DNA of 64,000 bases from Chrysemys picta bellii (GCF_011386835.1 NC_088797.1:87606001-87670000), one strand, 5' to 3'; shown: positions 37,446 through 64,000, numbered from the stretch's first letter. Numbers and translations are program-made. The notes: a model not told the origin generated them from the sequence alone.

Positions 37446-37610
37446 GCAGAAGAGCCCCGGAGAGCAACACAGTACTCAGCAGAAACTGGGCGCCTCATCC
37501 CACCTTCTTCTCGGGCAACAGCCCACCATACATCCCAACAGTTGTGCCGGAATAATGCGAAGAACAAAGGCAAAGATGCTGCCCTGTCTTTCCAGGACCA
37601 AGAGCTGGTA
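37446..37610 (+). CDS. TBATA: TBATA coding exon (AEEPRRATQYSAETGRLIP...FQDQELV)
   Basis: YSAETGRLIP and QDQEL motifs as in human TBATA (recalled). 165 nt, phase 0/0, donor GTAAGT. Confidence 0.93.
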
Positions 37611-38964: not shown

Positions 38965-39004
38965 GCATCTGATGAAGTGGGTTTTAGCCCACAAAAGCTT
39001 ATGC
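38965..39004 (+). ncRNA. Minimal type I hammerhead ribozyme motif, probably inactive (G12A)
   Basis: GCAU-CUGAUGA-A-GUGGG-UUUUAG-CCCAC-AAAA-GC-UU/AUGC. The CUGAUGA core is canonical, but GAAA has changed to AAAA. Confidence 0.6.
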
Positions 39005-39064
39005 CCAAATAAATGTGATAGTCTCTAAGGTGCCACAAGTACTCCTCGTTCCTTTTACTGTTAA

Positions 39065-39470
39065 AACTATGTGCCTTATTTCTAACTTGAATTGGTCTGG
39101 CTTCAACTTCTAGCCCTTGATTCTTGTTCTGCCTTTCTCTGTTATATTAAAATACCACTTAGTCCCTGGTGTTTTCTCCCCATGAAGGTACTTGTACATT
39201 GTAATCAAGTCATCGCTCAATAGTCTTTTAGATAAACTTAACAGATTGAGCTCTTAGAGATATTTTCTCTAACGTTCAAATAATTTTGTGCCTCTTTTCT
39301 GCACCTGCTTGAATTTTTCAACATCTTTTTAAAAATGTGGCCACCATAACTGGATGCAGTATTCTAATATCAGTCTTACCAATGTCATATGCAGAGGTAA
39401 AAATCACTTCCCTAGTCCTACTCACTATTCCCCTGTTTATACATCCAAAGACCATATTAGCCATTCTTTT
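39065..39470 (-). mobile_element. Old CR1 LINE fragment
   Basis: Reverse-strand similarity to the CR1 RT 3' region (aactggatgcagtattc, cttgaattggtctggcttcaacttc). Confidence 0.65.
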
Positions 39471-40456
39471 GTTCCTAGATGTATGACTTCATCTTTGGCT
39501 GAAAAAAATTGATATTTACTTCGAGATCATTAATAAAAATGTTGACTGATGACAGGCTGTAGTGGGCAGGGAATAGAGGACTGACATGTGTAAACAATGG
39601 GAAGGGAATAAATACTGCTCTTGTAGGAGTCATTTCCTTCCTCCCTCCCTCCCTCCCGGATACAAGTTTATTTACTAGAAGTCGGTTTGTTTCCCATATC
39701 TTGGATTTGATATTGTTTTGTTTTTAAAGGCTGAAGTGACAGTAGACAGCACCAGGTTAATTCAGCTGCCTTCAGAAAGGCAGCTGAAAGGGGTACTAAG
39801 AAGAGATATTCATGAGAATCTGCAGCAGTGCCCAAGAAACATTTTGAAATTCATCTCCTCTGTAGGCTGGGAGGAGAATGAGAAGTTCCAGTTTAGCATG
39901 TATAGCAAGTGTGACTAGGCCTGCCCCTGATTTGCTAACTATAGGCACAATAGATAGAGGGAAACAAGAGATGGTGAAAAAACACAACACAGAACATGGA
40001 GACATCAGTTCACTCCCAACTGATAATGTACTCTTATGTGGTGCGTTTGAGTGCCTGTATACAGGGACACTGGTCAGGAAGGGGTGAGATGCAGTGCAAC
40101 AGAAGATCCAATGTCCTAACAAGTTTAATCCAATTTAAACACTGACTCCGTGATCAGGGCCTTAGCCTAGTCTCTGTTGGGGTGGAGAGGGGGATATTTA
40201 CCCTTGCACAGTAGGCTTTGATAGATCATCCTCTACTTCTTTTATTATATTTTCAAATGTGTAGGTTAGACCCTGGGCAGGGAACAGTAACTCATAAAAC
40301 TGAAAGACAAAGTCCACACCTGTACGGTGTCTAGATAAGCAAGGTGCCTCTGTATGCATACCCTAATGACCTCCTGTTTGTCTGTGTTCCAGGTACAATC
40401 GGTGTCACTCTGACCTGATCATGCTGTCACTTTCTACTTTGCTCTTCTGCCAACAG

Positions 40457-40538
40457 ATTTTGGAGCTGCTGTGTCAGATCCTGCAGACAGACTCCTTGTC
40501 GGCTATTCAGCAATGGCTGCTCACAGCTGGTCAGAGGG
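40457..40538 (+). CDS. TBATA: TBATA coding exon (ILELLCQILQTDSLSAIQQWLLTAGQR)
   Basis: Matches human VLELLCRILETDLLSAIQFWLL (recalled). Donor G|GTGAGG. Confidence 0.95.
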
Positions 40539-41731
40539 GTGAGGAGAACCTGGAACCTCAACTTGGTGCCTGGGCAAGAGGAATAGACACCCACTTCTAT
40601 TCTCAGAGTTTGGCACCCTAATTATCTCTACTTCAGCAACCACAAGTTTATTCCCAATACACACTTTACAGCCTTTCAGAACAACCTGAGATTGTGGAGT
40701 ACACATTTTTCTATGAGGGAAAAGTTGCTTCTGGAGGAAAGATTCCTTCATATAGAATCTGTTAGTTCTTCACCAGTTACTGCAAACCAGGTCATTAGAA
40801 AACCCTAAGGATATGAATTTTGCTTGGTGTTCAAGGACTCAGAGGCTCCGGTGATGGGATTGGTATAGAATCTGGACAGATGGATGGCGTACATGGCTTT
40901 CTAAAAATTGTCTCTCTCTAGTCTCAGTTTTTTCTTCATTCTATCTTTCCTGCCAGTGATTGTCTTTTGGGTGTCACTGACTGTTATTAAATATGGCCCA
41001 GCATTAGAGTAAAGGACTGTTTCTATGTAAAAGCTGTAGGCCAAAATTTTCAAAGTAAGGCTTCTAAATCAATGACCTGATTTCCACACGTGCTGAGGAC
41101 CATTGACCTCAATGGGGGCTTCAGGTGCTTAGTACCAGTGAAAGTCAAATCACTTATTTATCTGCTTAAATAGGACTTTAGAGGCCTAGCTTCAGGCTTT
41201 TATGTTTGAATGTTTTGCTTCTGCGTTACAGGCTGCAGCTGAAGGTGCTGCTGCTGCTGAATTCAGGCTTCACTATTGAGTTCCAATATAAAAATGCAGC
41301 TGTAGGAAGATAAATATTGTTGGTCAGATTGTATTTATTGTATTCGTTTTAAGGGTATTTGCTCTGGGTGTGTTCCAGTTGAGTTGGGGAAATCCCTATT
41401 TCCACAAAAAGGGAATAGTGGGAGCTAGAGTGGCTCTTCTATCTTAGGTAGCACTGTAGCTCGTTTCTCCATGGACCTGTATTGCAGCAAGAGACCATTA
41501 CACATACCACTCGCCCAAGAACAGGATATCACTGGAGTCTTGCTGTACTTCTGATGGATCAACTTCTCTCTGCTCTGCTTGAGTACATGCAGAAAGTGAC
41601 AGAATCCAGGGCATAGGGAAATCATTTTATGACATTCACATGTTTCCAGATTGGAATCTCTCTCTCTCTCTCTCTCGTCACAGGTGAGATATTGTTTCTT
41701 CTGCTGCCTACTTGTCTTCCTCTCATTACAG

Positions 41732-41897
41732 AAAAGGATCTTGTTATGAAGATGTTGCAGACTGCAACTGCCAACCTACAACTGGAGCCCCAATCCTTGA
41801 GCACAAGCATGGACAAGAGGCTTCAGTCCCAGATGTCCCAGACTGCAGTGGGCCTGTCCTCCAGAGGGCAACACTTGGGAAGGAATCATCCAGCCAG
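41732..41897 (+). CDS. TBATA: TBATA coding exon (EKDLVMKMLQTATANL...)
   Basis: EKDL..LQTA motif. The 3' boundary CAG|GTTCTT is a weak donor but gives the phase 2 required by the next exon. Confidence 0.8.
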
Positions 41898-42428
41898 GTT
41901 CTTTCACAAAAACTATTCAATTGGATGTTCACAGTGTGACAGAACTGAAACATTTCACTTACTGAGGGCTGGAGACATGTTGGATACATTAGTTTGCATA
42001 TACAGCAGCAAGAAGAGAGAGAGATTCATCAAACAAGCAATAAAACTGATTTTGTCCACCTACTTAGCTCCCCTCTCCCCATTTCAACTGGTTTAACTGA
42101 GGGCCTGATCCAAAGCCCATTTAAGTCAATGGCATGGCTTGCAGACGTTGTTCAATGGGAGCCCATTGTTTCAGTAGCACATGGGTCAGAGATTAAGGTG
42201 AACTGGTAAAATTGTGCAGAGGCTTGGATTTCAGTACCTGTATGTGGACTTCCAGTCAATAGCATGAGCAGAGTAACTAGAAAATAAAAATACACATAAA
42301 CACAGGAAGTGAATGGCAAAGTGGCAGACTAATGCAACCTTTCATTTTCATGACTACCAGGTTTATTCAAAATTTAGAATTTTAGATTTAGAAAAATACT
42401 TAGTTTTCTCTGCATTTCTTTATAACAG

Positions 42429-42478
42429 ATTGTCTCAGAGTCAGAAGCAAGAACCCATTCCAGCGGAAGATAAGCCAG
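42429..42478 (+). CDS. TBATA: TBATA small coding exon (RLSQSQKQEPIPAEDKP)
   Basis: Acceptor aacag, donor G|GTAAAA. Phases 2/1 fit both neighbours. Confidence 0.75.
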
Positions 42479-42564
42479 GTAAAAATATTATATTAAATAA
42501 ATACTTTGTATTTATTACATACTCCCTTTGAATCCAAGGGTCTTAAGACATTTTATAAACATTA

Positions 42565-42740
42565 ATTAATTAAGCAGCAATAGACCTTTGAGGTAGGGAA
42601 GTATTTTACCCATTTTATGGGTGATGCCTTAGAGGAGTTAAGTGATTTCCCAAGAGTCACACAGTGAGCTACTGGCAGAGCTAAGAATAGAAACAAAGAG
42701 GTCCTGGCCCCGAGGCCAATGCTCTAACCACTTGATCAGA
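42565..42740 (-). mobile_element. MIR-like SINE
   Basis: ttttacccattttatggg...gttaagtgatttcccaagagtcacacag core. Confidence 0.55.
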
Positions 42741-42904
42741 CTTTCTGAACATTCACACCTTACTATGAGAGTAAGAATATACTACAGATAGACAAATAAA
42801 TGACAGCAAATTCCTTGCAGGCTATATTTTGGTAACACAGAGCAGGAGTTCAGATAGCCTTTTTGTGGTTGCCTCTGAGTGAACAGTAATGCATGCACAG
42901 TGAA

Positions 42905-43812
42905 AGAATCATAGAATATTAGGGTTGGAAGGGACCTCAGGAGGTCATCTAGTCCAACCCCTGCTCAAAGCAGGACCAATTCCCAACTAAATCATCCCAG
43001 CCAGGGCTTTGTCAAGCCTGACCTTAAAAACCTCTAAGGAAGGAGATTCCACCACCTCCCTAGGTAACCCATTCCAGTGCTTCACCACCCTCCGAGTGAG
43101 AAAGTTTTTCCTAATATCCAACCTAAACCTCCCCCATTGCAACTTGAGACCATTACTCCTTGTTCTGTCATCTGGTACCACTGAGAACAATCTAGATCCA
43201 TCCTCTTTGGAACCCCCTTTCAGGTAGTTGAAAGCAGCTATCAAATCCCCCCTCATTCTTCTCTTCTGCAGACTAAACAATCCCAGTTGCCTCAGCCTCT
43301 CCTCATAAGTCATGTGCTCCAGCCCCCTAATCATTTTTGTTGCCCTCCTCTGGACTCATTCCAATTTTTCCACATCCTTCTTGTAGTGTGGGGCCCAAAA
43401 CTGATAGTACTCCAGATGAGGTCTCACCAATGTCAAATAGAGGGGAATGATCACGTCCCTTGATCTGCTAGCAATGCCCCTACTTATACAGCCCAAAATG
43501 CCATTAGCACACTGTCGACTCAACCAGTTTCTTGTCCACTGTAGCCCCTAGATCCTTTTCTGCAGAGCTGCTGCCTAGCCATTTGGTTCCTAGTCTGTAG
43601 CAGTGCATGGGATTCTTCCGTCCTAAGTGCAGGACTCTGCACTTGTCCTTGTTGAACCTCATCAGATTTCTTTTGGCCCAATCTTCTAATTTGCCTAGGT
43701 CCCTCTGTATCCTATCCCTACCCTCCAGCATATCTACCACTCCTCCAAGTTTAATATCATCTGCAAACTTGTTGAGGGTGCAGTCCACACCATCTTCCAG
43801 ATCATTAATGAA
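42905..43812 (-). mobile_element. CR1 LINE 3' portion with internal deletion
   Basis: Minus ORFs 43504-43788 (KFADDIKLGG) and 42987-43334 ([24 protein letters not shown]) encode the CR1 RT C-terminus. ATTCTATGATTCT tail. Confidence 0.95.
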
Positions 43813-44525
43813 AGTTTTCAGTCTGGCTGGGATTTGGGCATGGGATCAGGATAGAATTTCATCCTTAGTTTTTCTGTGAAAATTCTGCTAAAGTGAATAA
43901 GAAGATTTTGCCCAATCATAAATCCCTGCCAGTAGAAATAAGTAAACTAGATTTTTAAAGAGTAATATATGTTGCGACTTGCCATTCTCCTGAGCTCCAG
44001 TTTTCAAAAAACAAAATACTGTATTCAAATCCAAATAAGCAAACCTGGCACTTCCTCCACAGTTCAGTTGTTCCAAGTCTTGGCGTTTATCGAAATGAAC
44101 TCTGCTATGAGCAATTTTTGTCTGTCTTTTCTAGCTAAATAAAGTGTATTGTTATAACCACCCAAAACAGTGGGAAACATTTTCAAAAACTCTTGAGACT
44201 TACAAGCCTACATCCCATTTTCAAAAGTGATTTAGGCACTTAGACACAGACTACATCTCTTAGATCCAGATTTTTATAGGTATTTAGATGCTTTAAGATG
44301 CAAATAAGCACCCAGTTGGAATTTTAAAAGTTACTAAGTACCTAGCTCCCATTGATTTCAATTGGAGATAGGTGTGTAGGGGCTTTTGAAAATCCTACTA
44401 GGTGCCTATCTACTTTTGTAGGTGCCTAAAATCTTTAAAAATCTGGCCTTTGGGCTCTGAAAATGTTATCCATATGGGTGAGGAGTTAGCTACTCTGTGT
44501 GATAACTGGTGTTGACCCACATCGA

Positions 44526-44941
44526 CATAGGCGCCGACTCCATGGGTGCTCTGGGGCTGGAACACCCATGGGGAAAAATTAGTGGGTGGTTAGCACCCAC
44601 AGGCAGCCAAGCTCCTCTCACCCCCCGCCCCACCTCCTCCTCCTCCCAGTGTGCCGCGTTCCCACTCCTCCACCACCTACCTCCCAGTGCTTCCCACCCA
44701 GCCACCACCAAACAGCTGTTTGGCAGTGTTAACAAGCTCCTGGAGGGAGAGGAGCGGGAATGTGGCACACTCAGGGGAGGAGGTGCGGAAGAGGTGGGTC
44801 CAGGACGTGGATTTGGGGAAGGGGTTGGAAGGGGGGCGGGGAAGGACATGACAGGGGCAGGGCCTCATGGAAGGGGTGGAGTTGAGGTGGGGCGAGGGGC
44901 AGTCGAGCACCCACAGGAAAGAGGGGAAGTTGGCGCCTATG
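44526..44941. mobile_element. Non-autonomous hAT element just upstream of the last TBATA exon
   Basis: TIRs cataggcgccgact / agttggcgcctatg. TSD CACATCGA / TACATTGA. Confidence 0.85.
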
Positions 44942-44977
44942 TACATTGACCCATCCCAAATTATTTTTCATTTTCAG

Positions 44978-45057
44978 TGCATATGGGTACTGCAGAAGTT
45001 CTCCAGTTCCATTTATCCCAGGATGGAAAGCAGAACCAGCCAGATCCACCCAATTAA
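44978..45057 (+). CDS. TBATA: TBATA last coding exon (VHMGTAEVLQFHLSQDGKQNQPDPPN*)
   Basis: Matches human YIGEAQVLQMHSSQ (recalled). Acceptor ttttcag, stop TAA at 45055-45057. The spliced CDS from 32332 totals 1110 nt (369 aa plus stop). Confidence 0.88.
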
Positions 45058-51646: not shown

Positions 51647-54600
51647 TACTGTTCTCCTAACCCTAATGCCCTGCTTTTCTGAATTATTTCCTTCTGAAAC
51701 AGATTACAATTCTGATCATCTTTCACGGACACTTGGTGAAGTGCTGTGATAGAGGCCTGAGATTAATTGAAAGCTTGCATTCCTCTGTGTGTGCATGTGC
51801 GCGTGTGCGTGTGTCTGTGTTTTCTATTCAATAAGCTTCATTCACAGAACCAGCTTTCTTATTCCTCTCCAGCCTGGCCCTTTAAGTAACCTGATCCTAG
51901 AGGCTGGAACTCCTCAGCCCCTGAAAAGGGAAGGAAGAGGGATGATTCTGCTGCTGCTTTTTTGGCCACTTTCTTGTCAATTTTCCTTCCTTTCTTTCCC
52001 TTTTCTTTCTGGTACAGAGGGGGGAGTGGCTAGGAGCCGAGAGCGGGTATGTTTCAGGGGACAGAGCTACTCTTCTGAACCCCCAGGCAGATTCAGCAGG
52101 GCAGACTCCAGACTGTTGCCTTTTCTCCACCCAGAAATCAATTTTGCAGGTTTTGTTGATTTCCTTGTTGCAGGCTTTGGCAAATCCAAATGATTTCCAA
52201 ACCTTTTATTTCTTTTGCTGCTGTGGCTGCTGCTGCTGGGGGTTGGAGCAAGGGATTAATGATTTGCTTCTCCTTCAATGTGTAATTCAGGGATAGGGAG
52301 AAGGTCAGGCCTGGTCAGCTGACATTGTGAATCCTGTCAATTCTGGCCACTCTGGAGGGGGGTTATTGTATTTTCCTCCTGCCCCGCTTCCTGCCCTGTC
52401 TTTTCTTTAGCCTTCTCCTCGTTCCCTAGCACTCTGTTTTGCTCACACACAATCCCCACCATGAATTCACAAGCAGCTTCAGGACATATCTGGCTGATTT
52501 TCTTTTTCTTTACCAGCTCAGCAAAAGGTAAGTGACTTTGCACTTCAGCTTCTGAAATAACATGAAATGGGAAAGTATCCTGTGGACCTGAGAAACAGGA
52601 TGCTTGTCACACCTTACACAAAACTCTGTATAATGCCTAGTGCTTACTGGAATTCTAGATCTCAAAATTATAGTCCCACAGTCAAAGAAGGGAAGTAGAA
52701 GGAAAGCTCTGAAAATGCTCAGATTTCTAATCTCTTTATGAAAATTTATTAGCATAGCAAGTAACAACAGCTTGTGCATCTCCAGAATTCAGGGACAGGT
52801 GGCTGGCTATAACTTAGTTTCAGGCTTCGTGATTAGAAGCTTCTCTCTGGATGCCTGGAAATACAGGAATACTGGCCTTTCAAGGTTCAACTTCATGTAA
52901 AAGAGCCACCACCAGTTACCTCTGATACACAGAGAATGGTTTAAAGAATTCAGCTAGATTTACACCTATGTATCCCTGGATCTACTATGGAGTTTTCCTT
53001 TCATGGAGACTTTGGCATCCTTTGGGGAGAGTTTTAAAACCTGTTTTGCTGGTCATTATAAAGGATCAGATGACAGAATTCCAAAACATTTCAGTAACCT
53101 ACTACATTCACAATGAATTGGAAGAATAGTAGGTCCTTTTGAGAATTTCAAACACAATTGTATCTTTAGATAATGGATTGAACGGATTATTCCTCATGGC
53201 AAAAGCAAACACAAAAATCAGAGTCAATCTTTAAGTATATACAAAGTATAAAATACACAAAAAGATTGATCTCAGATAATTCTAGACATACTACGTAAAA
53301 TGAAAAATTAAAGAATACTAAGGCTGAGGTAGAAAAACAAAGACATTCTGAGGCAAGGCCTCTCCAGCAAGTTTATCCTAGCCTGCTGTGGTTAGGTAAA
53401 TGATTAAGTTAGGGACAGGGGGTTATGACTTAGCTGCACTTCTCATCACTGCTACTTTAAAACAGGCAAAACTGTGGATGAAAGGGGGAGTATGTCATCT
53501 CTTCCCTCACCATCAAATATTCTAAGTTGTCCAAGGTAGGATGGAATGAATGGTCATCTCTGTAAGAATTCTTCAAACTTTGCTGAGCATGAACATATCC
53601 ATGGAACTGTGCTATAGGACTAGAATTCAGTCCCTGGAAAGAAACCTCTGGCACCGGCAGCAGTGGACAGGAGTAGGAAATGAAAAAGAGACTGACGTCT
53701 TCTGTTGAGAGCTAATCTCCAAGGTCCCATCTGAGGTCTTGAAGTCCCACGGCAGGGTTCCCGTTTTTATTTACCTTTCAGCAGAATTGTGCAAGCTAAT
53801 CCTTAATGGGCCAATGAATCAACCACTATCAACCCTATCAATCAAAAGATCTCCTGACACTCAAATATTACAGCAATGGGCGTGTTACAAGAACCTACAC
53901 AGAATAACATAGAAAAAAACTGCAGCAAATTAAGAAAGTTTTTACAGGTTTCCACTGGTTGACAATAGCAAATGTTATTGTATTAGGATACCAGCAATCT
54001 GTAATTCAACAGTTTGTAAGGGATTAAGAAATAGAATGAAGGTTCCCAGTAAATTATGAGTGGATGGAGTTTACATACAGCACTACTCAAAGGTGAATGA
54101 TAGGGCTGCTTAGTAACTTTACCCAAGGTCTCAGAGACCACAGCAGAGAGTGGAAGAAGATCCTCATCTGATATAATTTGTCATAGCTCCATTGTTATAA
54201 TTCCATTGACTTCAGTAGAGTTATAACAACTTAAACCAGTTGAGGATTTGCTCCAGGCTGTGTATTCAAACTGGTGGTGAGACACTACAGTGCACATAAT
54301 TAATTTTAATAGGCCCACATTTGGCTGCTAAACTTGCTATGGACCTGTGCTGGGTAATTACATAGACCATTGAACCCTTCCATGCAGTGGTTTTGTTAAC
54401 AAAGGTATCTTACTAAATTTTCATCCTTAGTCCTTGATAAACCCCAGATATATGAGTGATAAGATGGGGAAGGTGGGATCAGGGAATCCATTCATTTATT
54501 TTCTCATTTAAACAAAAACACTTTCCCACAACCCAGGAAAGAAAACCAGTACCACTGGGCAAACAGACTTTTGTGCATTTGCTGGAAATGTATATCCATT

Positions 54601-55325
54601 CCTGAAAAATATAGTGAGAATATTGGTAGTGTAGTAGTGCCCTAATTGTATTGGTTGAAGAGGGGGACTGGGGAATTAAGCATTTTCTAACAAAGACTCA
54701 TTGTATCCACCTATCAGTATTGGTGCAATATTGTCTATTTCAAAAAGCAAAGCAATACAATTCAGAAGTATTTTCATGGGCCCAAGGGGTAAGTCATCAC
54801 TGGCAGAGAAGGGAGCGAACTCCATCAGAGTTTGTGAAATCAATCCCAATTCACCCTTCAATCTGATCATGGAACTGTATCAAGGAGCTTTTGATCAGCC
54901 TTTTACATTCCCTCCCTGCATCCATTAGAGCCAAGGGGAGTTCCCTGCCCCTCTTCCCAGCTGAATCTGTAGAAGCTGGGTTGATCTTCTCACCTGAAAG
55001 TCACCCTGTTCACATCAATTCAGCAGCATCCAAATATACGTTTGAGGCTAGAACATCAGCAGGTGTAAATTGGGGTAGCTTCATTGAAGTTTGGGCTAAT
55101 TTACACTAATTGAGGATCCAGGCCTTGAAATTCAATTTTCTGGGTTAGATACAATACATATTGCTAATTCACTCTCAGTTTTAGAAGTGATTCCATTTAT
55201 TTTTCGGCTCTGTTGTTGATACACTGTAAAATGGAAGACACAGGCAGATAAAGCAAATAGTTTTGTTGATGTAACATAAAAATGTTCTTTCCCCTGCCAG
55301 TCACTGGGTTAGGCTTTAGTGCAAA

Positions 55326-55362
55326 TGACCCAATGCAACTTTTTAAGGTGATATATATATAA
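55326..55362 (+). promoter_or_regulatory. Candidate core promoter of the MTTP-like gene
   Basis: TATATAA at 55356-55362, about 60 bp before ATG 55423. A TGACCC nuclear-receptor half-site and a CCAAT lie at 55326-55334. Confidence 0.4.
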
Positions 55363-55422
55363 TCTTTCAAGCTTTCAGAGTCAGTGGAGTTGGACAGAGA
55401 GAAATCCAAACGACTGTCAGAC

Positions 55423-55483
55423 ATGGAAGTAGTTTCATCCCTAGTGTCACTCCACTGGCTTCATCTGCAAATGTACATTGCCG
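55423..55483 (+). CDS. MTTPL: MTTP-like paralogue, probable exon 1 (MEVVSSLVSLHWLHLQMYIA-G)
   Basis: 61 coding nt, phase 1, the same size and phase as MTTP coding exon 1 (recalled). TATA box upstream, donor G|GTATTA. The peptide is only moderately hydrophobic. Confidence 0.6.
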
Positions 55484-56230
55484 GTATTATCATGGACATT
55501 AGAAATAGAAAAGCCCTTTTAGGTCACTTGGCCAGTGCTGGCCAGCCCTGTTCTGTACATTGTTTCTAATGCTTTATGAAGTCTAATTCTAAATGTCTCC
55601 CTGGATGGCAATTCCACCATTTGGGTGATTATGCCACAGGCTACGAATCTTGAGGTCAGGAAGCATTTCTTAGTATTTAGCCTGATTTTTCTCTTTTTAA
55701 ATTTTAATTCATAGTGCAAGACCCATTACTGGGCTAAAGCTCTCATAATGTCATAAATCACTGGTAGTTTTTGCAGGGTTCCACCTAAAGGCTCTTTGTA
55801 CAAATCACAGTCTTTGAAACATCTACATCTGTGAGGGGTGAGTCTGTTATTGGCACTTAGTGGGGAAAAGCAGAGCAGAGACACAAGCTCTCAGAAAGCT
55901 CAGTCAAATCTAAGGGTGTGGACAAGGTCCTTTCTAATCTTTACTCCTAATTGTACCCCTTTTTTGAAGGGCCCAGGAATAGGAGTTACTAAAGGCAGGA
56001 TAAGTGGAGGTTCTTTCTACCAACCCAGGCCTCAGCAGCAGGACCAGGGAGAGTAAGAAAACATATGTATTTCTCTCAGACAGGTTCTGATCTAAAGCCC
56101 ATTGAGGTCAATGGGATTCTTTTCATTGCCGCTTAACCTATATGCTGAGATAAATTTGAATCCAAGCCATCATGGGTACTGAAGAATGTGAAAGTGTGTG
56201 CGTGGCTTCAATTCTGGTCTCCTTTCATAG

Positions 56231-56412
56231 GGAACTTAGAGACACCATCTTTCCAGCCTGGAATCCTCTATCAATACCGCTACTCACTGGAGGTGCAGCT
56301 AGATTATGTCTCAAGGTTGTCCTTGCAAGGAAGTCGGATGCGGGCTGAAGCTTTGGTTCAGGTGCACCTGCTCTGGAGAAATCCTGCAGGGGAGCAGCTT
56401 CTCCAGATCCAG
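56231..56412 (+). CDS. MTTPL: MTTP-like paralogue exon 2 (LYQYRYSLEVQLD...VHLLWRNPAGEQLLQIQ)
   Basis: Aligns with MTTP LYKLTYSTEVLLD...VALLWRNPDGDDDQLIQI (recalled). 182 nt versus 188 nt; donor CAG|GTATGT. Confidence 0.9.
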
Positions 56413-56806
56413 GTATGTGATGGCTTTGTCCCCTAGTACCTACAAGCCTGAGAATAGCTATTGGTGCTTCTAGTACCAACAGGCTATGAGGATTTCCTTT
56501 TAGTTCAAGTGATGGAGCTACTACTGCTGGATCATCTTGGGCTCCATCAGCAACTGGTTCCTCCCATGTAAGCAGATGAAGTTTTTACTCAGGCATGCTG
56601 ACCTGAGAAACTGGCCAGTGGCTTGTCCTTACCCAAACATTAATAAGCCAGTTTAGGGCCAAAGCGCTTGCCTGAGAGTTTCTTCACTGAATAAACACAT
56701 AGCAATGCTAACTTCAGTTGGTGGGCACAGGAGACATTCAATCCCAACCATCTTCTGTTTCCGACATAAGTGGTGTCTGTGAAGAGTCTATGAGATATGT
56801 TAAAAA

Positions 56807-58153
56807 TAGGGCTGTCAAGCGATTTAAAAAATAATTAACAGCCTGATTAAAAAAATAAATCGCCATAAAAAAATTAATCACATGATTAATCGCACTATTA
56901 AACAATAATAGAATACAATTTATTTAAATATTTTTGGATGTTTTCTATATTTTCAAATATATTGATTTCAGTTACAACACAGAATACAAAGTGTAGAGTG
57001 CTCACTTTATATTTATTTTTATTACAAATATTTGCACTGTAAAAAAACCAAAAGAAATTTTATTTTTCAATTCACCTAATACAATGTAGTGCAATCTCTT
57101 TGTCATGAAAGTTGAACTTACAAATGTAGAATTATGTACACAAATAACTGCACTCAAAAACAAAACAATGTAAAACTTTAGAGTCTACAAGTCCATTCAG
57201 TCCTACTTCTTGTTCAGCCAATCCCTCAGACAAACAAGGTTGTTTATATTTATGGGAGATAATGCTGCCCAATTCTTGTTTACAACGTCACTTGAAAGTG
57301 AGAACAGTTGCTCACATGGCATTGTTGTCGCTGGTGTTGCAAGATATTTACGTGTCAGATGCGCTAAATATTCATATGTCCGTTCATGTTTGAACCACCA
57401 TTCCAGAGGACATCCGTCTATGCTGATGTTGGGTTCTGCTTGACAATGATCAAAAGCAGTGTGGACCAACACATGTTCATTTTCATCATCTGAGTCAAAT
57501 GCCACCAGCAGAAGGTTGGGGTTGTTGTTTTTTTTGGTGGTTCGGGTTCTGTAGTTTCCGCATCAGAGTGTTTCTCCACACCTTGTCCCTCTCGGATTTT
57601 GGACGGCACTTCAGATTCTTAAACCTTGGATCCAGTGCTGTAGCTATCTTTAGAAATCTCACCTTGGTACCTTCTTTGTGTTTTGTCAAATCTGCAGTGA
57701 AAGTGTTCTTGAAACAAACAATATGTACTGAGTCATCATCTGAGACTGCCATAACATGAAATATATGGCAGAATGTGGGTAACACAGAGCAGTTATGTAA
57801 CAAAAAAAAATCTACTGTAAATCGCACTTTCACGATAAAGAGATCGCACTACAATACTTGTATGAGGTGAATTCAAAAATACTATTTCTTTTGTTTATCA
57901 CTTTTACAGTGCAAATATTTGTAATAAAAATAATATCAAGTGAGCACTGTACACTTTGTATTCTGCATTGTAATTGAAATCAATATATTTGAAAATATAG
58001 AAGAACATCCAACAATATTTAGTAATTTTCAATTGGTATTCTATTGTTTAGCAGTGTGATTAAAACTGCGATTGATCATGATTAATTTTTTTAATTGCGA
58101 TTAATTTTTTTGAATTAATCGTGCGAGTTAACTGCAATTAATAGACAGCCCTA
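56807..58153 (-). mobile_element. Internally deleted hAT transposon with a C-terminal transposase remnant, in MTTP-like intron 2
   Basis: TIRs tagggctgtc / gacagcccta, perfect TSD GTTAAAAA. Minus ORF 57203-57505 encodes a hAT dimerization domain (PLEWW...LA.L.RKYLATPAT..PCE.LFS). Confidence 0.95.
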
Positions 58154-58273
58154 GTTAAAAATGAACTCTGTGGCTCCCCTCAAGTCAAATGGCCAGAGGT
58201 GCTGGGAAGTGGGACACACACATGCTCTGTGACCCATACCCTCATACCTTCCATCTGTCTTTTGTGGTTTTAG

Positions 58274-58417
58274 ATCCAAGACCTAAAAGTCTACCATGAT
58301 TCAAAACACAAGAAGATTCAGAATGTTACTGGAGACCCATCCACTGAGGTTGTGCTGGGCAAAGAGGACACCGAAGAGCTTCAGCTGCCAGTTTTCCTCC
58401 ACTGGAAGAATGGGAAG
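58274..58417 (+). CDS. MTTPL: MTTP-like paralogue exon 3 (IQDLKVY...LGKEDTEELQLPVFLHWKNGK)
   Basis: 144 nt, phase 0/0, the same size as MTTP exon 3. Aligns to [21 protein letters not shown] (recalled). Confidence 0.88.
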
Positions 58418-59674
58418 GTGTGTTAATAGTACCCTACCCACAGACACACAAAAAGCACCTCCCATCCCTATTCAAACCCTGAGGAGTCCCTCATTTTCCC
58501 TGCTTTACATTCTTGCCACTCTCAGTATGTGTCAAGCACCACTCCTCTGGCCATGGACCCCAAGATGAACCTCTCCTCAGATGCTATCAGTGCTGCTGTT
58601 TAACTGGCTAGTGGGAGAGACTGTTGAGTAGCAGAAGGCATTCCCTTTCTGGGAATAAGTGCCCTACCCCAGCCTTTCAGTGTCTAAACACCTGCCAGCC
58701 CAGACAGTTAGTCACTTCACTTCATGCACTAATGGAAGGCACTCCAATATTATGGTGAGGAAGGTGCTATGAGCACCTCTATAGAACAGAATAGAGCAAA
58801 TGAAAGAATTTGGAAGTAGATCTCCTGCACAGCTGTGGGACTATAGAGTCAGCCAGTGGGCTCCAGGTGTGATAGTTCTGTTAAAATAGAATAGTCTTGA
58901 GCAGTCTAGGTTAGCAGTGGTGGCTCTAGGTCAAATTTTTAGGTGGGAGAGTGTTGCTTATTACTGCATAGAAGCTGATTACTTAAGAGAACTCTTGAAA
59001 GCTCTCCTACACCCCTCCCTACTCAGACAGTCTCGCCTCTGCTGTGACTTGTAGGTTGTTCAGGGAGGTACCGACACTCTTTCTGAAGTCCTGCTATTGC
59101 TACAAAGCCGCCTGCTCTGTCGTACATTACACAATTGGGTGGTCTACAGGAGCTGCCCCTGCACTGGTCCTACATTTACTGTTCAGTTAACAGCTGTGGA
59201 TGCCTCATAGGATTCGGATGAAGATAAAAGAATGTTATTTCGACTCAGTAGAGCAGTGTTCCAGGTACCCACAGGTGGAACTGCCACTGCTTTAAGGTTT
59301 GCACAAAGTGCAGAGGCCTCACTTTTAAAAAAGACTTTGTGGCCATAAATGTATTGTGAAATTAAGCCCGTGCTAGTCAGGGATATCAGGGTGGTTTTTT
59401 TTAAGCCTTTCAAAGCAGTGTAATCGTCACCTAGTTCTAGTACAGTGTCAACACAATGAATGGAGTCCCATGCCTGAGGTTCTCCCTACTGCCCCCTCAT
59501 CTGAAATTTTTCTCCACCTTGAACTGCAAGATCAGTCTAGAAAACCCTTCTGAGAGCCTGGAGAGAGGGCAATTCTCTCATTATCATGCTATCTCCATGC
59601 CTTCATGCTGAGTTCTTGTCCCTTTCTCAGCAGAGTCTGGGATTCTCTCCCATAAATCAAATTTCTTCTCATAG

Positions 59675-59782
59675 GTAGAAGGCATCTACGGAGATAAAGG
59701 AGGAAGGTCCCAGACCTTGAATCTGAAACAGGGCCTCATCAGTCTCCTCCAATTCCAGCCACATTCTGGGACAGCAACTGAG
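59675..59782 (+). CDS. MTTPL: MTTP-like paralogue exon 4 (VEGIYG...NLKQGLISLLQFQPHSGTATE)
   Basis: 108 nt, as in MTTP exon 4. Aligns to [21 protein letters not shown] (recalled). Donor GAG|GTAGGA. Confidence 0.92.
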
Positions 59783-60275
59783 GTAGGAGCAGAATATAGT
59801 TTTTTGGGTGTTTTTTTTTTCCCAAAGAAAAAGATGCAGGAACTTAGTGCATCAATAAAACCATCCCTGGAGTGAGAGGATGTTTCCCTCTCCAAACGTA
59901 TTCTTCTTTTCTGCAATTGCTAATTAATGCCAGTTACAATAATGTTTTTCATAATTTCTGTCATTATATTCATGCTCTTTTTGAGTCTACTTGCTATAAT
60001 GACTTAAATGTCAAATACCCATTTGGGTGTGCAGTTGCCTGATTTTATACACTCAGTTTGTTGCAGTAACTATGCTAACTGGAATAGGCATGTGGTTTTT
60101 GAGCCTCATTTTCAAAATATGGCCCTTTATCTGGTTCTGTGCAGATTTTCTACATAATCTGTTCAAATTGGATTGAATTATTTTTGTGTATAGTGAACTG
60201 TATTTTATTCTGCCACAAGTTCTACTCACACATTGTCATTTCATGACATGATTTCTTATATTTGTTTGGCTTCAG

Positions 60276-60392
60276 GAAGATGTTTCTGGGAGCTGTCAAG
60301 TCACATATGTTGTTTCCGAGGATTCCATTGTAAAGACAAAAGATCTGCAAAGCTGCACAAGGCCAAAGTTTGGATTCACCTCCGTTAACAAA
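60276..60392 (+). CDS. MTTPL: MTTP-like paralogue exon 5 (EDVSGSCQVTY...KTKDLQSC...GFTSVNK)
   Basis: 117 nt, as in MTTP exon 5. LLTP motif DVSG.C.VTY and two Cys 20 residues apart. Ends at a GC donor (GCAAGT). Confidence 0.92.
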
Positions 60393-61199
60393 GCAAGTCC
60401 ATTCCTACATTGGTGGTGGTGGGTTAGAATGTTCCTGCCCCAGTCACACCCCTTTTAAATGTACTACACTTCTCCAGATCTTACCTTAGGGGCAGTAACT
60501 TCAGGGAGGTCCCAGAGTGAACAGTCTCAGGTGTATTATGATCATTTCATGCTAGGGCTTAAAGAAAGCTTTGAAAAGAAAGAAAAGTTCATTTTTGAAG
60601 CCTCCTTGGGGTCTCTTCTGCCAAAGCTTGGTGGCTACTGAAAAATTAAGGCAGAATCAGATTCAATGATCATTCTGAGCCTCATGCTCAAAAGGAGCAA
60701 AGGAGACTGAATATCCAGAAATATTTGCTAATAGTGAAATCAATTGGATTGTGGAAGTGGAAGAGTGTGACAAGGGAAATGGCAGAAGCCCCAATGGCTG
60801 GTTTCAGGCATTCCGACCTGGTAAAATTAGGTACAATTCTAATGATGCTAGTGGCCTTACATCTGCCTATGCCAAGAGTGATTTGACTCATATCTTAGAT
60901 TTCACTGAAAGCACTAGAGAATAAACTATAGGGAACGAACCTGCACTATAGGTGACCTAATAGGAATATTTATATAAAAAAGCCATTTAAATGTAAACAT
61001 GGCACATTTCCCACAGAAAATAATGGAATTTCTACCAGGACCAAATTCATGAGGACACAGGTTTGTCCAGGGTGGATGTGTGTGTGAGGATAAGGTTGAA
61101 GGCAGTGGTAGAACTTTAGGACTCAGTCTAATAATTCCCATTGAGTTAATGGAAGTCCTGATCAGGATCAGGACAATAGTGCCTTCACTGGGCTGAGAC

Positions 61200-61400
61200 A
61201 CAACATGGTCAAGTGAACTGAGTGCTTAACTAGAACTCAGGAGACCTGAATTCCATTCCTGACTCTCCCACAGGCCTGTAGTATGACCTCTCTGAACCTC
61301 AGTTTTCCCATCTGTAAAACAAAGCTAATGATACTGACCCACCATTGTAAAGTGCTTTGAAATCCACAGATGTAAAGCACTATATAAGAGCTGTGTGTTA
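61200..61400 (+). mobile_element. MIR-like SINE
   Basis: ctctctgaacctcagttttcccatctgtaaaac core and a gtaaagtgctttga tail. Confidence 0.65.
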
Positions 61401-64000
61401 TTACTCCTATAATTCACTATGTAAACTGGGTCACTGTATCTCATGTACAAACATTCACAAAGCAAACCTGGTAGTTTCCTGCAGCTCTATTCTTCCCCTG
61501 TGACTTCCCCATTCATAAAGAATCCTCCAGATAATGGCCCAGGTGCTCAGATAACGTCTCCTGAAGTTATCCGAGGTCTCTGAGTGAAGTTGAGGGCAGC
61601 AGAGAGGTGATGGTGAAGTCCGGCAAGTGCGTCATTTCTTTGGAAAGCAAAAGAATCTCGTGCAAGGTCACTCTGCAGCACAGCAAGGGAGCCAAGCATT
61701 TTTGGCTTGGGTTCACTTTTGATAATTTGTGCTTTTTCTCTCTTTTTTACTTTGTGAATGGCCTTGTGAATAAGCACACTAACCCAGGAGGCTTTCCCTT
61801 TCTGTGCTTTCCTTTTTCACAGGAGATTAAGGGGCGGGGGTAAGGGTATTGCTGGTGAAATTTGCTGGCTTGACACTGCTGCAGAATGAAGCTTCTCTTT
61901 ATCCACAAAAGATCCCCTCACATTGCCCCTTTAATATGATTTGGTCACACTCTGTATTAGGAATCTATTTACACATTGTTTATAAGGGGTTACTAAACAA
62001 ATAGTAGATGTTACAAATGTGAGTTGTTTGCATTATAGATGGTTATAAGCACAACAGTAGAAGATGTTATAGATATTTTTGAGCCATGGTTATAGTGACC
62101 TGCTAGTCTTTATAACAATCTATAACATCTGTTACTAATTCCCTGAACCATAATTCCCCCCAATTAAGAGTATCCCTTAATTGTAAGGATATTGGGGGTA
62201 TGGATGGGAGTTGTCTCTCTAGATTGTCTGAATGTTTGTGACCAGAATGAGTGTGATATGAGACAAAGGCAATAGGGAGTTACCTAGAAAGAGAGCTGAG
62301 GGCAGTCAGACCTGTAGTGCTGTCAACAGAGGCTGATGGAACGCCATTCAGAATCCATTGCTATTGCCATGTGAGGCATTCATTTCACATTTGTTTAGCT
62401 AGTTTTGCACAGAGCACTGTGTATCTCTTGATGACTAAAAGAAACAGCCAAGGCACCCAAAGCATAAGAGTTGCCCTGTGTTAATACATTTTCTTATTCA
62501 TCTCTGGAGACCAGGGCTCAAATATGGAGTAAGTCAAAAGTGAAATGTGTTTGGTGAGCTCAATATAGTCCCTGGGACATGTGCCCATAGCACAAAACCA
62601 CTTCACAAAATTATGTATCAAAACCCATCTTCAGTGCCTTTTCCTGGGCCACTACTTGTGCAGTCCTGTGCTGTACATGAGTGATTAGAGGCTGGCTGAC
62701 CCCAGACAGTAATTCTTTCTCCCCTAGTCCAAAATCCCTTCCTGATACTTTCACCCTGAGAAAGCATCACTATTTTTCCCTTTAGCTAAGGCTTTGGCAA
62801 TGACAATTTGTAATACATGGAACGTTCCACTGGGTGTCACTGTTCCTCCACACTAATCTCCGCTATAGCGTGGGAACCTGACAGGAAACATCTCTCTTTA
62901 GTTTAAGTGCTCTGGTGCTGAAGATGGCGCCAGATGTATCTTGGAAGACCCACTCCTCCCATGCAGGCTGGATGTTCCTCTTAGAGCCTGTTGGTTCCAC
63001 TTACAGAAAATTGCTGGTGGGAGTTATGCACGTTCTGGCAGTAGTGAAGGGACTAGCAAGATCCTACTGGTGCCCAGAGAATGCCCTAAGAGTAACAATT
63101 AATGTTGTGCTCTACAGTTAGATATAGAAAATAGAGTAGGCATTTCTTTATTTTTCCTTACATACATTTTAAGATGAATCTGGTGTTCATGAAAGGGTAG
63201 GATTGAGTTAACAACCTTTCTCCGCAGCCCCCAGCCTTGTTGAAGATGGCCCTACTCAGCTCTGCCAGCCCAGAGTTCAGGAACTGAACTAGACTGTTCC
63301 ATTCTTGGGCCCTACTCCATAGAGTTATTCCAATGCACTTGAGCTCTCAGATAAAGCGTCTCCAACTGTCCTACTCCTGTCCTCTCACAGCTCAGTCAGC
63401 CTTCCTCATTCCTTTTCTAGCTATTCCAAGCCTGTGCCACCTCCCAGCTCTTCAGTGCACTTAGCTGTAACCTGAAGCAGTCCCCCATAGTCTACTACTA
63501 GATCCCAGCTCAGTTTAGCAAATAGACACCAGTCTTAACCTGCAACAACCACTGATATCCCTGCCTTGGATTCCTAAATAGCTCTGTCTCTGTACTTCAC
63601 TTCTGATCTGACCCACCCTCTGCTGAACCACCTCTTAGTTCTGCTATTGCATCTCAATCCCAAGTTACAGTATGCCTTGTCATTATAGTCCTGGACTCCA
63701 CACAATAATGCCAATATATGCGATGCAGGACCTCCTACTATTATAGTCATAGATCTGTCCGGGCACCCACAAACAACATCCCCTCCTAGTTCAGTCCTGG
63801 GCATCTTCCCTAATGACCAGAAATAGACAAAGCTGCCAAATTGTGTGGTGGTTCTGTCATGAGGTGGTTCTTTCATCCAGTAGGCTCCAGGGTAAGACTA
63901 TCAAATGCATAGACACAACTTTTGTTAGAAATAAAAAGGAGAGCAAACACTGAAAGGAGAACAAGAAAGGAATAGATTGGCAAAAAGATGATGTGTTCGT

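What the first reader, a model, noticed from the sequence alone, without database searches (positions are those of the whole stretch)
55423..60392. Divergent second MTP (MTTP-like) lipid-transfer gene that is invisible in the ORF track
Five exons (61, 182, 144, 108 and 117 nt) splice in frame into 204 aa of an LLTP N-terminal beta-barrel. Their sizes and phases match human MTTP exons 1-5 (61/188/144/108/117, recalled), and the Cys pair equivalent to C174-C194 is kept. By hand alignment to the recalled human sequence, identity is only about 14/36 in exon 4 and 17/39 in exon 5. That is lower than I would expect for a true reptile orthologue, so this looks like an ancient paralogue with no counterpart that I know of at the human TBATA locus. 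An MTTP-like gene (MTTPL) is, as I recall, annotated in chicken, so the gene may not be new, but a second lipoprotein or vitellogenin lipid-loading factor in an egg-laying reptile is poorly characterised. Exon 6 was not found before the window ends, so I cannot show the gene is intact.
Basis: partly seen in the sequence, partly recalled or inferred. Interest (0 to 1): 0.8.

Follow-up and report, generated by a model that had tools for sequence, protein, structure and literature searches.

The report
Painted turtle MTTPL gene, 5' part
The stretch holds the first five of 18 coding exons of the painted turtle's MTTPL gene, an old sister copy of the lipoprotein-loading gene MTTP; it is real and intact, but already annotated in this genome and already studied in chicken, so it is ordinary.

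Summary
Its exon 1 (55423-55483) is a chance ATG-GT stretch inside intron 1. The true first coding exon is 52461-52527 (67 nt) and encodes a signal peptide.

With that exon, the 206-aa peptide is 100% identical to Chrysemys picta bellii 'microsomal triglyceride transfer protein-like' (XP_042712817.2, 889 aa). Window 42461-64000 is base-for-base identical to that genome's record.

The gene is intact, with 18 coding exons. Exon 6 starts 16 nt past the window end. A spliced transcript contig whose product is 99.8% identical to Mauremys reevesii MTTPL confirms every junction.

A tree separates MTTPL (sharks to birds) from true MTTP with full support, and six species carry both genes. Turtle MTTPL is 36-39% identical to MTTP, whereas bird and marsupial MTTP are 65% identical. 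Exon phases match between the two genes and 13 of 18 exon sizes are the same.

The predicted fold matches human MTP (TM 0.86-0.88). All eight cysteines and the PDI-contact residues are kept.

The 'ancient paralogue' reading is therefore supported, but the gene is known. In chicken, MTTPL is oestrogen-induced and promotes hepatic VLDL export.

The parts
52461..52527 (+). True coding exon 1 of MTTPL. It is 67 nt, starts at the ATG, encodes the signal peptide MNSQAASGHIWLIFFFFTSSAK plus the first base of Gly23, and has donor GTAAGT. 5'UTR sequence extends upstream to at least 52379.
   Evidence: tblastn with the N-termini of the turtle proteins gives 23/23 identity. The spliced peptide is 100% identical to P0106/P0149. 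The Mauremys transcript L002 aligns to 52379-52531 and then jumps to exon 2.
52528..56230 (+). Intron 1 (3703 nt).
   Evidence: Exon mapping. The false exon is one of 24 chance ATG...GT phase-1 candidates in this intron. It matches no homologue and is not in transcript L002.
56231..56412 (+). Coding exon 2 (182 nt, start phase 1): first strands of the N-terminal beta-barrel.
   Evidence: Alone it hits human MTP residues 32-82 and 16 library proteins, 9 of them at E<=1e-10.
56808..58160 (.). Internally deleted hAT DNA transposon inside intron 2. It is a passenger, not part of the gene product.
   Evidence: Long inverted ends. Dimer_Tnp_hAT remnant at 57206-57562 on the minus strand, E=4.8e-14.
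58274..58417 (+). Coding exon 3 (144 nt, phase 0). It is the least conserved part of the barrel and includes a low-confidence loop at residues 96-105.
   Evidence: pLDDT is below 50 for residues 96-105. No hit on its own in PDB or Pfam.
59675..59782 (+). Coding exon 4 (108 nt, phase 0).
   Evidence: 14/36 identical to human MTP (alignment).
60276..60392 (+). Coding exon 5 (117 nt, phase 0), with the Cys174-Cys194 pair. It ends at a non-canonical GC donor (GCAAGT).
   Evidence: Human MTP residues 169-205, E=1.5e-5, and Vitellogenin_N, E=1.2e-4. The GC donor junction is confirmed by transcript L002.
60393..64000 (+). First 3608 nt of intron 5. Exon 6 (140 nt) starts 16 nt beyond the window end, and exons 6-18 follow over the next 19.1 kb.
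   Evidence: No protein match in this stretch. Exons were mapped on the same genome record, L001.
16997..45054 (+). Coding exons of the upstream neighbour TBATA (SPATIAL domain). It is the synteny marker for the MTTPL locus.
   Evidence: tblastn of Chrysemys TBATA isoform X3 (P0152) gives ten blocks at 90-100% identity. PF15256 is recorded on the gene called upstream in L001.

Best explanation
The window carries the promoter side and coding exons 1-5 of 18 of MTTPL (microsomal triglyceride transfer protein-like) of the western painted turtle. The gene is intact and is an ancient sister gene of MTTP.

Shown here:
- The exons encode a signal peptide and the first two thirds of the N-terminal beta-barrel.
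- The full 889-aa protein has the same three-domain build as the MTP large subunit: beta-barrel, helical domain, and a C-terminal two-sheet lipid pocket.
- It keeps all four MTP disulfide pairs.
- It has no ER-retention tail of its own.

Inferred from homology:
- The protein enters the ER lumen and is held there as a heterodimer with protein disulfide isomerase.
- It shuttles neutral lipid and phospholipid from the ER membrane onto nascent apoB, so that VLDL can be built and secreted.

Taken from the chicken literature and inferred for the turtle:
- Its main job is in the liver of reproducing females. Oestrogen raises its expression there, and it supports the large export of triglyceride-rich VLDL destined for yolk.
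- Canonical MTTP covers housekeeping lipoprotein assembly.
For: Identity and integrity:
- The 206-aa spliced peptide is 100% identical to XP_042712817.2.
- Window 42461-64000 matches GCA_011386835.2 CM062324.1 at 21540 of 21540 bases.
- There are 18 open coding exons summing to 2667 nt plus TAG.
- A spliced transcript contig from run SRR27880521 aligns exon by exon with the locus. Its product is 99.8% identical to Mauremys reevesii MTTPL and it carries the complete reading frame from the true ATG.
- dN/dS between Chrysemys and Mauremys is 0.35 over the whole CDS.

Family:
- Pfam MTP_lip_bd E=2.7e-90 and Vitellogenin_N E=1.4e-50. The window part alone gives Vitellogenin_N E=2.8e-21.
- The close orthologue from Emys aligns end to end with human MTP, E=2e-188.
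- The AlphaFold model has pLDDT 83.5 and pTM 0.84. It matches 6I7S chain G at TM 0.86/0.88 and 39% identity. Lipovitellin is next at TM about 0.6.

Paralogy:
- The tree puts a 100% branch between the two gene clades, and the same species appear on both sides.
- Identity to MTTP is 36-39%, against 65% between bird and wallaby MTTP.
- Exon phases are identical and 13 of 18 exon sizes are equal between turtle MTTPL and bird MTTP.

Mechanism residues:
- C174/C194, C299/C302, C441/C446 and C829/C879 are kept.
- N606/Y607 (human N604/Y605), Q530/R540, and pocket residues L633, V664, V778 and F813 are kept. Their roles are described in PMC6717300.
- The C-terminus is ...TEAKEQ, with no KDEL.

Physiology:
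- Chicken MTTPL is 7.65-fold higher in laying-hen liver (PMC6839265).
- In chicken, overexpression lowers and knockdown raises intracellular TG, cholesterol and VLDL, and the gene is oestrogen-induced (PMC12947693).
- Two MTTP genes are reported as expressed in alligator small intestine (PMC7298530).
Against: - No expression data from Chrysemys itself were available. The transcript evidence comes from another turtle, and its tissue is unknown.
- Binding to PDI, lipid transfer and the apoB client are all inferred. No biochemical transfer assay exists even for the chicken protein.
- Several MTP positions differ in the turtle: human N780 is Thr, S662 is Ala and S590 is Arg.
- The barrel part encoded in the window evolves fast. 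dN/dS is 0.72 on only 21 changes, and identity to chicken MTTPL is about 50%. The client or its binding mode may therefore differ from MTP.
- No oestrogen or PPAR response element stands out above chance near the promoter.
- The tree has no outgroup, so the root, and hence the exact age of the duplication, is inferred from species overlap only.
Confidence: 0.85

Rival explanations
1. MTTPL has the MTP fold but has taken on a different job. It might load vitellogenin or another LLTP client rather than apoB. It might transfer mainly phospholipid, as invertebrate MTPs do. Or it might act mainly in intestine or yolk sac rather than in the female liver.
For: The apoB-binding N-terminal barrel is the least conserved domain: 31-36% identity to MTTP and 51-59% to bird MTTPL, against 70-72% to bird MTTPL in the C-terminal domain. 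dN/dS is 0.72 in exons 1-5 against 0.35 overall. Pocket positions N780 and S662 differ from MTTP. The alligator study lists both MTTP copies among intestinal fat-absorption genes. The gene is kept in egg-laying lineages from sharks to birds, and every mammal hit fell in the MTTP clade.
Against: Chicken overexpression and knockdown change VLDL, triglyceride and cholesterol export and apoB/apoVLDL-II expression, which fits an MTP-like role (PMC12947693). Most tested pocket residues and all PDI-contact residues are kept. The dN/dS difference rests on very few substitutions.
Confidence: 0.12
2. The exons are a dying or unexpressed copy (a pseudogene) that only looks intact in its 5' part.
For: The window alone ends in intron 5. 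Exon 5 uses a non-canonical GC donor. The barrel region shows relaxed constraint between two turtles.
Against: All 18 exons are open, with consensus splice sites apart from the one GC donor. The GC junction is used in a real spliced transcript from a related turtle. Whole-gene dN/dS is 0.35. Eight cysteines are conserved across about 450 million years of divergence. Full-length orthologues exist in many turtles.
Confidence: 0.02
3. It is simply the turtle's canonical MTTP orthologue, fast-evolving, with no second copy.
For: It is the best PDB match to human MTP, with the same exon count and phases. Some public records name members of this clade plain 'MTTP', for example Bombina, Xenopus, Columba and Calypte.
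Against: The tree places it with chicken MTTPL, apart from a fully supported MTTP clade that includes birds and lizards. Identity to sauropsid MTTP is 38-39%, while bird and skink MTTP share 68%. Exons 1 and 2 are 67/182 nt, as is exon 1 in chicken MTTPL, not 61/188 as in MTTP. The gene sits beside TBATA, and the chicken orthologue lies on chromosome 6 between an SGPL1-like and an ADAMTS gene. A painted-turtle MTTP was not itself retrieved here.
Confidence: 0.01

Closest known systems
Chicken MTTPL (GeneID 769580, chromosome 6) and its annotated orthologues in birds, crocodilians, turtles, squamates and amphibians
   Same: Same orthologue group in the tree. The length is similar (889 aa in the turtle, 881 aa in chicken). 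The 67-nt first coding exon is the same. The Pfam pair Vitellogenin_N + MTP_lip_bd is the same. The genomic neighbourhood corresponds (TBATA / SGPL1-like / ADAMTS block). The painted-turtle gene itself is already a RefSeq model, XP_042712817.2.
   Different: Protein identity to chicken is 61% overall and about 50% in the window-encoded part. The turtle gene spans 30.7 kb against 8.5 kb in chicken. Nothing is known of its regulation or tissue pattern in turtles.
[quoted passage not shown]
   Same: Same three-domain fold (TM 0.86-0.88). It has 18 coding exons with identical phases and 13 identical sizes. The four disulfide pairs, the PDI-contact Asn-Tyr and the Gln530/Arg540 pair are kept. It has a signal peptide and no KDEL.
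   Different: Identity is only 36-39%. It forms a separate clade and sits at a different locus. It evolves about 1.3-fold faster by identity loss: bird-skink identity is 57% for MTTPL against 68% for MTTP. Pocket residue N780 is Thr and S662 is Ala. Exons 1 and 2 are 67/182 nt instead of 61/188.
Other large lipid transfer proteins: vitellogenin/lipovitellin and apolipoprotein B
   Same: They share the N-terminal beta-barrel plus helical module (Vitellogenin_N) and the Cys174-Cys194-type disulfide.
   Different: The relationship is far weaker: lipovitellin E=2.4e-10, TM about 0.6 and 16% identity; apoB100 TM about 0.35. MTTPL lacks their long lipid-carrying C-terminal regions and instead has the MTP-specific lipid-binding domain.

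Membership tests
MTP large-subunit family (LLTP superfamily) | N-terminal LLTP module (beta-barrel plus helical domain, Pfam Vitellogenin_N) | tested here: met
   PF01347 E=1.4e-50 over residues 30-580 of the full protein. The 206 residues encoded in the window give E=2.8e-21 over residues 30-196.
MTP large-subunit family (LLTP superfamily) | MTP-specific C-terminal lipid-binding domain (Pfam MTP_lip_bd) in a protein of about 890 aa, without apoB/vitellogenin-type extensions | tested here: met
   PF19444 E=2.7e-90 over residues 595-885 of the 889-aa product. This part is encoded outside the window, on the same genome record.
MTP large-subunit family (LLTP superfamily) | Three-dimensional fold of the MTP alpha subunit | tested here: met
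   AlphaFold2 model with pLDDT 83.5 and pTM 0.84. Best PDB match is 6I7S_G: E=4e-77, TM 0.86/0.88, 860 aligned columns. The structure is predicted, not solved.
MTP large-subunit family (LLTP superfamily) | Conserved disulfide cysteines of MTP (C174-C194, the CxxC pair near 300, C440-C445, C827-C878) | tested here: met
   All eight turtle cysteines (174, 194, 299, 302, 441, 446, 829, 879) align with the MTP cysteines. Six are invariant in all 48 aligned sequences. Their roles are described in PMC6717300.
MTP large-subunit family (LLTP superfamily) | Heterodimer with protein disulfide isomerase, which supplies ER retention | not testable with these tools
   Indirect evidence only. The PDI b'-contact residues Asn604/Tyr605 are kept (Y invariant, N in 35 of 37 MTTPL sequences), and there is no KDEL tail.
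MTP large-subunit family (LLTP superfamily) | Lipid-transfer activity and support of apoB-lipoprotein secretion | not testable with these tools
   The chicken orthologue changes VLDL, TG and cholesterol export on overexpression and knockdown (PMC12947693). No transfer assay has been reported, and there are no turtle data.
MTP large-subunit family (LLTP superfamily) | Cleavable N-terminal signal peptide for ER entry | tested here: inconclusive
   The true exon 1 encodes MNSQAASGHIWLIFFFFTSSAKG, with a strong hydrophobic core (Kyte-Doolittle maximum 2.16) that is modelled as a helix at residues 3-18. No dedicated signal-peptide predictor was available.
MTTPL orthologue group (chicken MTTPL) | Groups with chicken MTTPL and apart from MTTP in a family tree | tested here: met
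   Turtles are sister to crocodilian plus birds (including chicken P0077) within a 31-sequence MTTPL side. The MTTP clade of 13 is split off by a branch of length 0.61 with SH-aLRT 100. This is a quick search with no outgroup.
MTTPL orthologue group (chicken MTTPL) | Conserved locus next to TBATA, in the SGPL1-ADAMTS14 block | tested here: met
   TBATA ends 7.4 kb upstream on the same strand. TBATA-MTTPL fusion models exist in lizards, a turtle and a sturgeon. Chicken MTTPL lies between a Pyridoxal_deC (SGPL1-like) gene and an ADAMTS gene. The identity of the chicken neighbours is inferred from Pfam domains only.
MTTPL orthologue group (chicken MTTPL) | Oestrogen-induced expression in the liver of laying females | not tested
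   Known for chicken (PMC6839265, PMC12947693). No turtle expression data were within reach. ERE and DR1 motif scans of the window were at chance level.
Canonical MTTP orthologue group | Falls inside the MTTP clade with orthologue-level identity (about 65% among amniotes) | tested here: not met
   It lies outside the MTTP clade. Identity to bird, lizard and marsupial MTTP is 36-39%, against 65-68% among those MTTPs.

The most novel reading that the evidence does not exclude
MTTPL is not a sauropsid oddity. It would be one of two MTP genes already present in the last common ancestor of jawed vertebrates. It is kept in cartilaginous fishes, non-teleost ray-finned fishes, lungfish, coelacanth, amphibians and sauropsids, always beside TBATA where tested. 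It would then have been lost independently in mammals and in teleosts. If so, the painted-turtle gene is a tractable reptile example of a dedicated, hormone-switched lipoprotein loader for provisioning large yolky eggs. Its loss in mammals would track the loss of yolk dependence. I found no paper in the searchable library that describes this history.
Probability: 0.35. Interest if true: 0.5.

Novelty: already known. Interest (0 to 1): 0.2.

Why it matters
For this window it matters little. The gene is a RefSeq model in this very assembly, and its chicken orthologue has been studied functionally.

Three things are worth keeping:
- The corrected gene start, with a real signal-peptide exon about 3 kb upstream of the reported range, plus the GC donor of intron 5.
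- The demonstration that the two MTP genes share one exon plan.
- The wide but patchy distribution of MTTPL across jawed vertebrates.

That distribution suggests egg-laying vertebrates run two MTP systems, one constitutive and one tied to reproduction. This bears on how very large amounts of yolk lipid are exported from the liver, and on why hen VLDL output does not follow MTTP levels.

Tried and rejected
- Single-exon searches. Exons 3 and 4 alone found nothing in PDB. In Pfam, exon 3 found nothing, exon 4 gave a weak Vitellogenin_N match (E=0.12) and exon 2 gave a spurious phage-domain match. The pieces are too short, so I switched to the identical stored protein (P0149:1-206).
- The ORF listing on 60393-64000 is uninformative for short eukaryotic exons.
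- Exon 6 inside the window: searched with three turtle proteins at small word size and not present.
- Locus look-ups of isoform X2 (P0106) and Varanus MTTP (P0217) are not on record. I used isoform X1 and Mesitornis MTTP instead.
The slowly evolving coelacanth protein as query finally returned true MTTPs.
- Oestrogen response element and DR1/PPRE scans gave counts at or below the shuffled expectation, with nothing close to the promoter except a 2-mismatch DR1 at 50907.
- Matching chicken neighbour-gene fragments to the window hit only a CR1 repeat, so SGPL1 or the START-domain gene could not be placed in the turtle.
- Rfam found no RNA family in the window.
- My exon mapper did not resolve chicken exons beyond exon 1, so only exon 1 is compared.
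- Literature searches for an evolutionary study of the second MTP gene found none.

Full report
**What is in the sequence.** The window has no N runs.
- 56231-56412 (182 nt)
- 58274-58417 (144 nt)
- 59675-59782 (108 nt)
- 60276-60392 (117 nt)

Each is preceded by a pyrimidine-rich tract and AG. They are followed by GT, GT, GT and, for the last, GCAAGT. They join in frame. Taken singly, exon 2 matches human MTP large subunit at residues 32-82, and exon 5 matches residues 169-205 (E=1.5e-5). Exon 5 also matches Pfam Vitellogenin_N. Exons 3 and 4 are too short to score on their own.

The two cysteines align with human C174 and C194.

**The first exon is elsewhere.** A search of 1.84 billion representative proteins with exon 2 found 16 proteins, three of them (near) full-length at about 890 aa. 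All full-length relatives begin with a conserved hydrophobic signal peptide (MNSQAASGHIWLIFFFF... in turtles).

That signal peptide is encoded at window 52461-52527, with 23 of 23 residues identical, and is followed by GTAAGT. With this 67-nt exon the spliced product is 206 aa. It is 100% identical to the first 206 residues of 'microsomal triglyceride transfer protein-like' of Chrysemys picta bellii (P0106; isoform X1 is P0149, XP_042712817.2, 889 aa).

It is one of 24 ATG-to-GT phase-1 stretches of 40-100 nt there, two of which are exactly 61 nt. So it is a chance feature, probably picked because it fitted the recalled human exon size.

**Source and completeness.** The genomic place of P0149 was fetched as L001 (GCA_011386835.2, CM062324.1:87648461-87699134). 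Window 42461-64000 equals L001 1-21540 at 21540 of 21540 bases. The window is therefore painted-turtle chromosome sequence, and window position x equals L001 position x-42460.

Exact exon mapping gives 18 coding exons of 67, 182, 144, 108, 117, 140, 154, 158, 169, 108, 213, 215, 98, 122, 228, 125, 171 and 148 nt. They sum to 2667 nt and are followed by TAG. Exon 6 begins at L001 21556, which is 16 nt beyond the window's last base.

**Evidence of use.** L002 is a 5198-nt assembled contig from sequencing run SRR27880521. It carries an uninterrupted reading frame whose product is 99.8% identical to Mauremys reevesii MTTPL. It aligns to the painted-turtle locus in 18 blocks at 94-100% identity. 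The block ends fall at the mapped exon boundaries, including true exon 1 with at least 82 nt of 5'UTR and the GC donor after exon 5. This is a spliced mRNA from a related turtle. The tissue is unknown.

Between the two turtles dN/dS is 0.35 for the whole CDS. For exons 1-5 alone it is 0.72, on only 21 changes. Rfam finds no RNA family anywhere in the window.

**What the gene is.** The full protein has Pfam MTP_lip_bd (E=2.7e-90) and Vitellogenin_N (E=1.4e-50). The window-encoded part alone gives Vitellogenin_N at E=2.8e-21. The Emys orthologue aligns end to end with human MTP (E=2e-188), while lipovitellin scores only E=2.4e-10.

An AlphaFold2 model built on a 48-sequence alignment has mean pLDDT 83.5 and pTM 0.84. 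It superposes on human MTP chain 6I7S_G with TM 0.86/0.88 over 860 columns at 39% identity. Next come lipovitellin, honey-bee vitellogenin and apoB100.

**Orthologue or paralogue.** Three homologue searches gave the following.
- MTTPL proteins came from well over a hundred birds, turtles, crocodilians, squamates and amphibians.
- With the coelacanth protein as query, MTTPL also came from lungfish, sharks, rays, a chimaera, paddlefish, bowfin and sturgeon.
- That same search returned true MTTP from birds, lizards, mammals, teleosts and a ray.

A maximum-likelihood tree of 44 sequences splits a 13-member MTTP clade from all MTTPL sequences by a branch of length 0.61 with SH-aLRT 100. The MTTPL side follows the species tree: turtles next to crocodilian plus birds, then squamates, amphibians, lobe-finned, ray-finned and cartilaginous fishes. 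The window's gene sits beside Emys.

Narcine, Varanus, Phrynosoma, Mesitornis and Podargus appear on both sides. Lerista also has both genes. Whatever the root, the duplication is older than the split between rays and birds.

Identities agree with this:

| Comparison | Identity |
|---|---|
| Turtle MTTPL vs bird, lizard and wallaby MTTP | 36-39% |
| Bird vs wallaby MTTP | 65% |
| Bird vs skink MTTP | 68% |
| Bird vs skink MTTPL | 57% |

**Gene structure.** The true MTTP gene of Mesitornis (L005) has coding exons of 61, 188, 144, 108, 117, 140, 151, 158, 169, 108, 213, 212, 98, 122, 228, 125, 171 and 166 nt.

Every phase equals that of turtle MTTPL, and 13 of 18 sizes are identical. Exons 1 and 2 differ (67/182 against 61/188) but sum to the same 249 nt. 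Chicken MTTPL also has a 67-nt first coding exon.

**Neighbourhood.** TBATA (SPATIAL domain) occupies window 16997-45054 on the same strand. Its last coding exon ends 7.4 kb before the MTTPL ATG.

Public gene models in Lerista, Hemicordylus, Zootoca, Pangshura and a sturgeon fuse TBATA with MTTPL. That shows the adjacency is old.

Chicken MTTPL lies in a 36.2-Mb chromosome record (CM028487.1). PMC6839265 places the gene (GeneID 769580) on chromosome 6. It sits between a pyridoxal-dependent decarboxylase-type gene (SGPL1-like) and a START-domain gene followed by an ADAMTS gene. From general knowledge, that corresponds to the human ADAMTS14-TBATA-SGPL1 region. This was not tested here.

**How it most likely works.**

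Shown here:
- A signal-peptide-like N-terminus.
- No KDEL-type tail (C-terminus ...TEAKEQ).
- All eight cysteines aligned with the four MTP disulfide pairs.
- Conservation of Asn604/Tyr605 (intimate contact with the PDI b' domain), Gln530/Arg540, the Leu713/Met714 and Trp770 surface patch, and pocket residues Leu633, Val664, Val778 and Phe813. Their roles come from the human MTP structure paper PMC6717300.

Different from MTTP:
- Asn780 is Thr and Ser662 is Ala.

Inferred:
- The protein enters the ER and is retained as a heterodimer with PDI.
- It moves lipid from the membrane to nascent apoB.

From the literature on the chicken orthologue:
- Hepatic expression is 7.65-fold higher in laying hens (PMC6839265).
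- It is induced by oestrogen.
- Overexpression lowers, and knockdown raises, intracellular triglyceride, cholesterol and VLDL (PMC12947693).
- An alligator study lists MTTP1 and MTTP2 among intestinal fat-absorption genes (PMC7298530).

Transfer of this physiology to the painted turtle is inference. Scans for oestrogen and PPAR response elements in the window are at chance level. That fits the chicken report of no classical ERE but proves nothing.

**Verdict.**
- The interpretation, an ancient MTTP paralogue equal to chicken MTTPL, is supported.
- The gene is already annotated in this assembly and functionally studied in chicken, so it is not new.
- The residual interest lies in the deep, patchy distribution of MTTPL. 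Every mammal and teleost sequence retrieved was MTTP. I could not test that exhaustively, and I found no paper in the searchable literature that describes it.

Noticed in passing
window 16997-45054 (+): Ten coding blocks of TBATA (SPATIAL domain, isoform X3) lie directly upstream of MTTPL on the same strand. Public gene models in several lizards, a turtle and a sturgeon fuse TBATA with MTTPL. These are either annotation artefacts or read-through transcription.
   Followed up: partly
window 56808-58160, in MTTPL intron 2: Internally deleted hAT DNA transposon. It has inverted ends of roughly 280 nt and a hAT dimerisation-domain remnant on the minus strand (57206-57562, E=4.8e-14).
   Followed up: yes
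window 47704-48721 and 48784-49215: A GC-rich 256-nt repeat in about 3.9 tandem copies, also matching itself in inverted orientation, followed by short-period GC-rich arrays. It lies in the TBATA-MTTPL intergenic region and overlaps a CpG-rich kilobase at 49001-50000. Related GC-rich translations recur near 8.1-8.6, 13.1-13.8 and 27.7-28.1 kb, which suggests a dispersed repeat family.
   Followed up: partly
window 42990-43845 (-); L001 33619-34552: A CR1-like reverse-transcriptase fragment lies inside TBATA's last intron (weak RVT_1 match). A 91% identical copy sits in inverted orientation in MTTPL intron 14.
   Followed up: partly
window 1792-2552 (+) and 24028-24582 (+): Remnants of other mobile elements: a Harbinger/PIF-type DDE_Tnp_4 transposase (E=6e-17) and a GIY-YIG domain ORF of the Penelope-like kind (E=7e-6).
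   Followed up: partly
window 6001-7000: A CpG island (GC 0.61, CpG observed/expected 0.82) with a 364-codon open frame of low complexity, about 10 kb upstream of the first mapped TBATA coding exon. It could be an alternative TBATA promoter or the promoter of a gene lying off the window.
   Followed up: no
L003 (chicken chromosome 6, MTTPL locus): Chicken MTTPL spans only 8.5 kb, against 30.7 kb in the turtle. It is flanked by a pyridoxal-decarboxylase-type (SGPL1-like) gene, a 278-aa START-domain gene and an ADAMTS gene, and no TBATA gene was called in the 10 kb upstream. A sturgeon fusion model also carries SPATIAL and START domains, so the START gene may be an old neighbour.
   Followed up: partly
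proteins P0197-P0241; tree: MTTPL orthologues exist in sharks, rays, chimaera, paddlefish, sturgeon, bowfin, lungfish and coelacanth. Every mammal (echidna, wallaby, macaque) and teleost (eel, two knifefishes) sequence retrieved was MTTP. This hints at independent loss of MTTPL in mammals and teleosts.
   Followed up: partly
window 60393-60398: Intron 5 of MTTPL uses a GC-AG splice pair (GCAAGT donor). The junction is confirmed by the transcript from a related turtle.
   Followed up: yes
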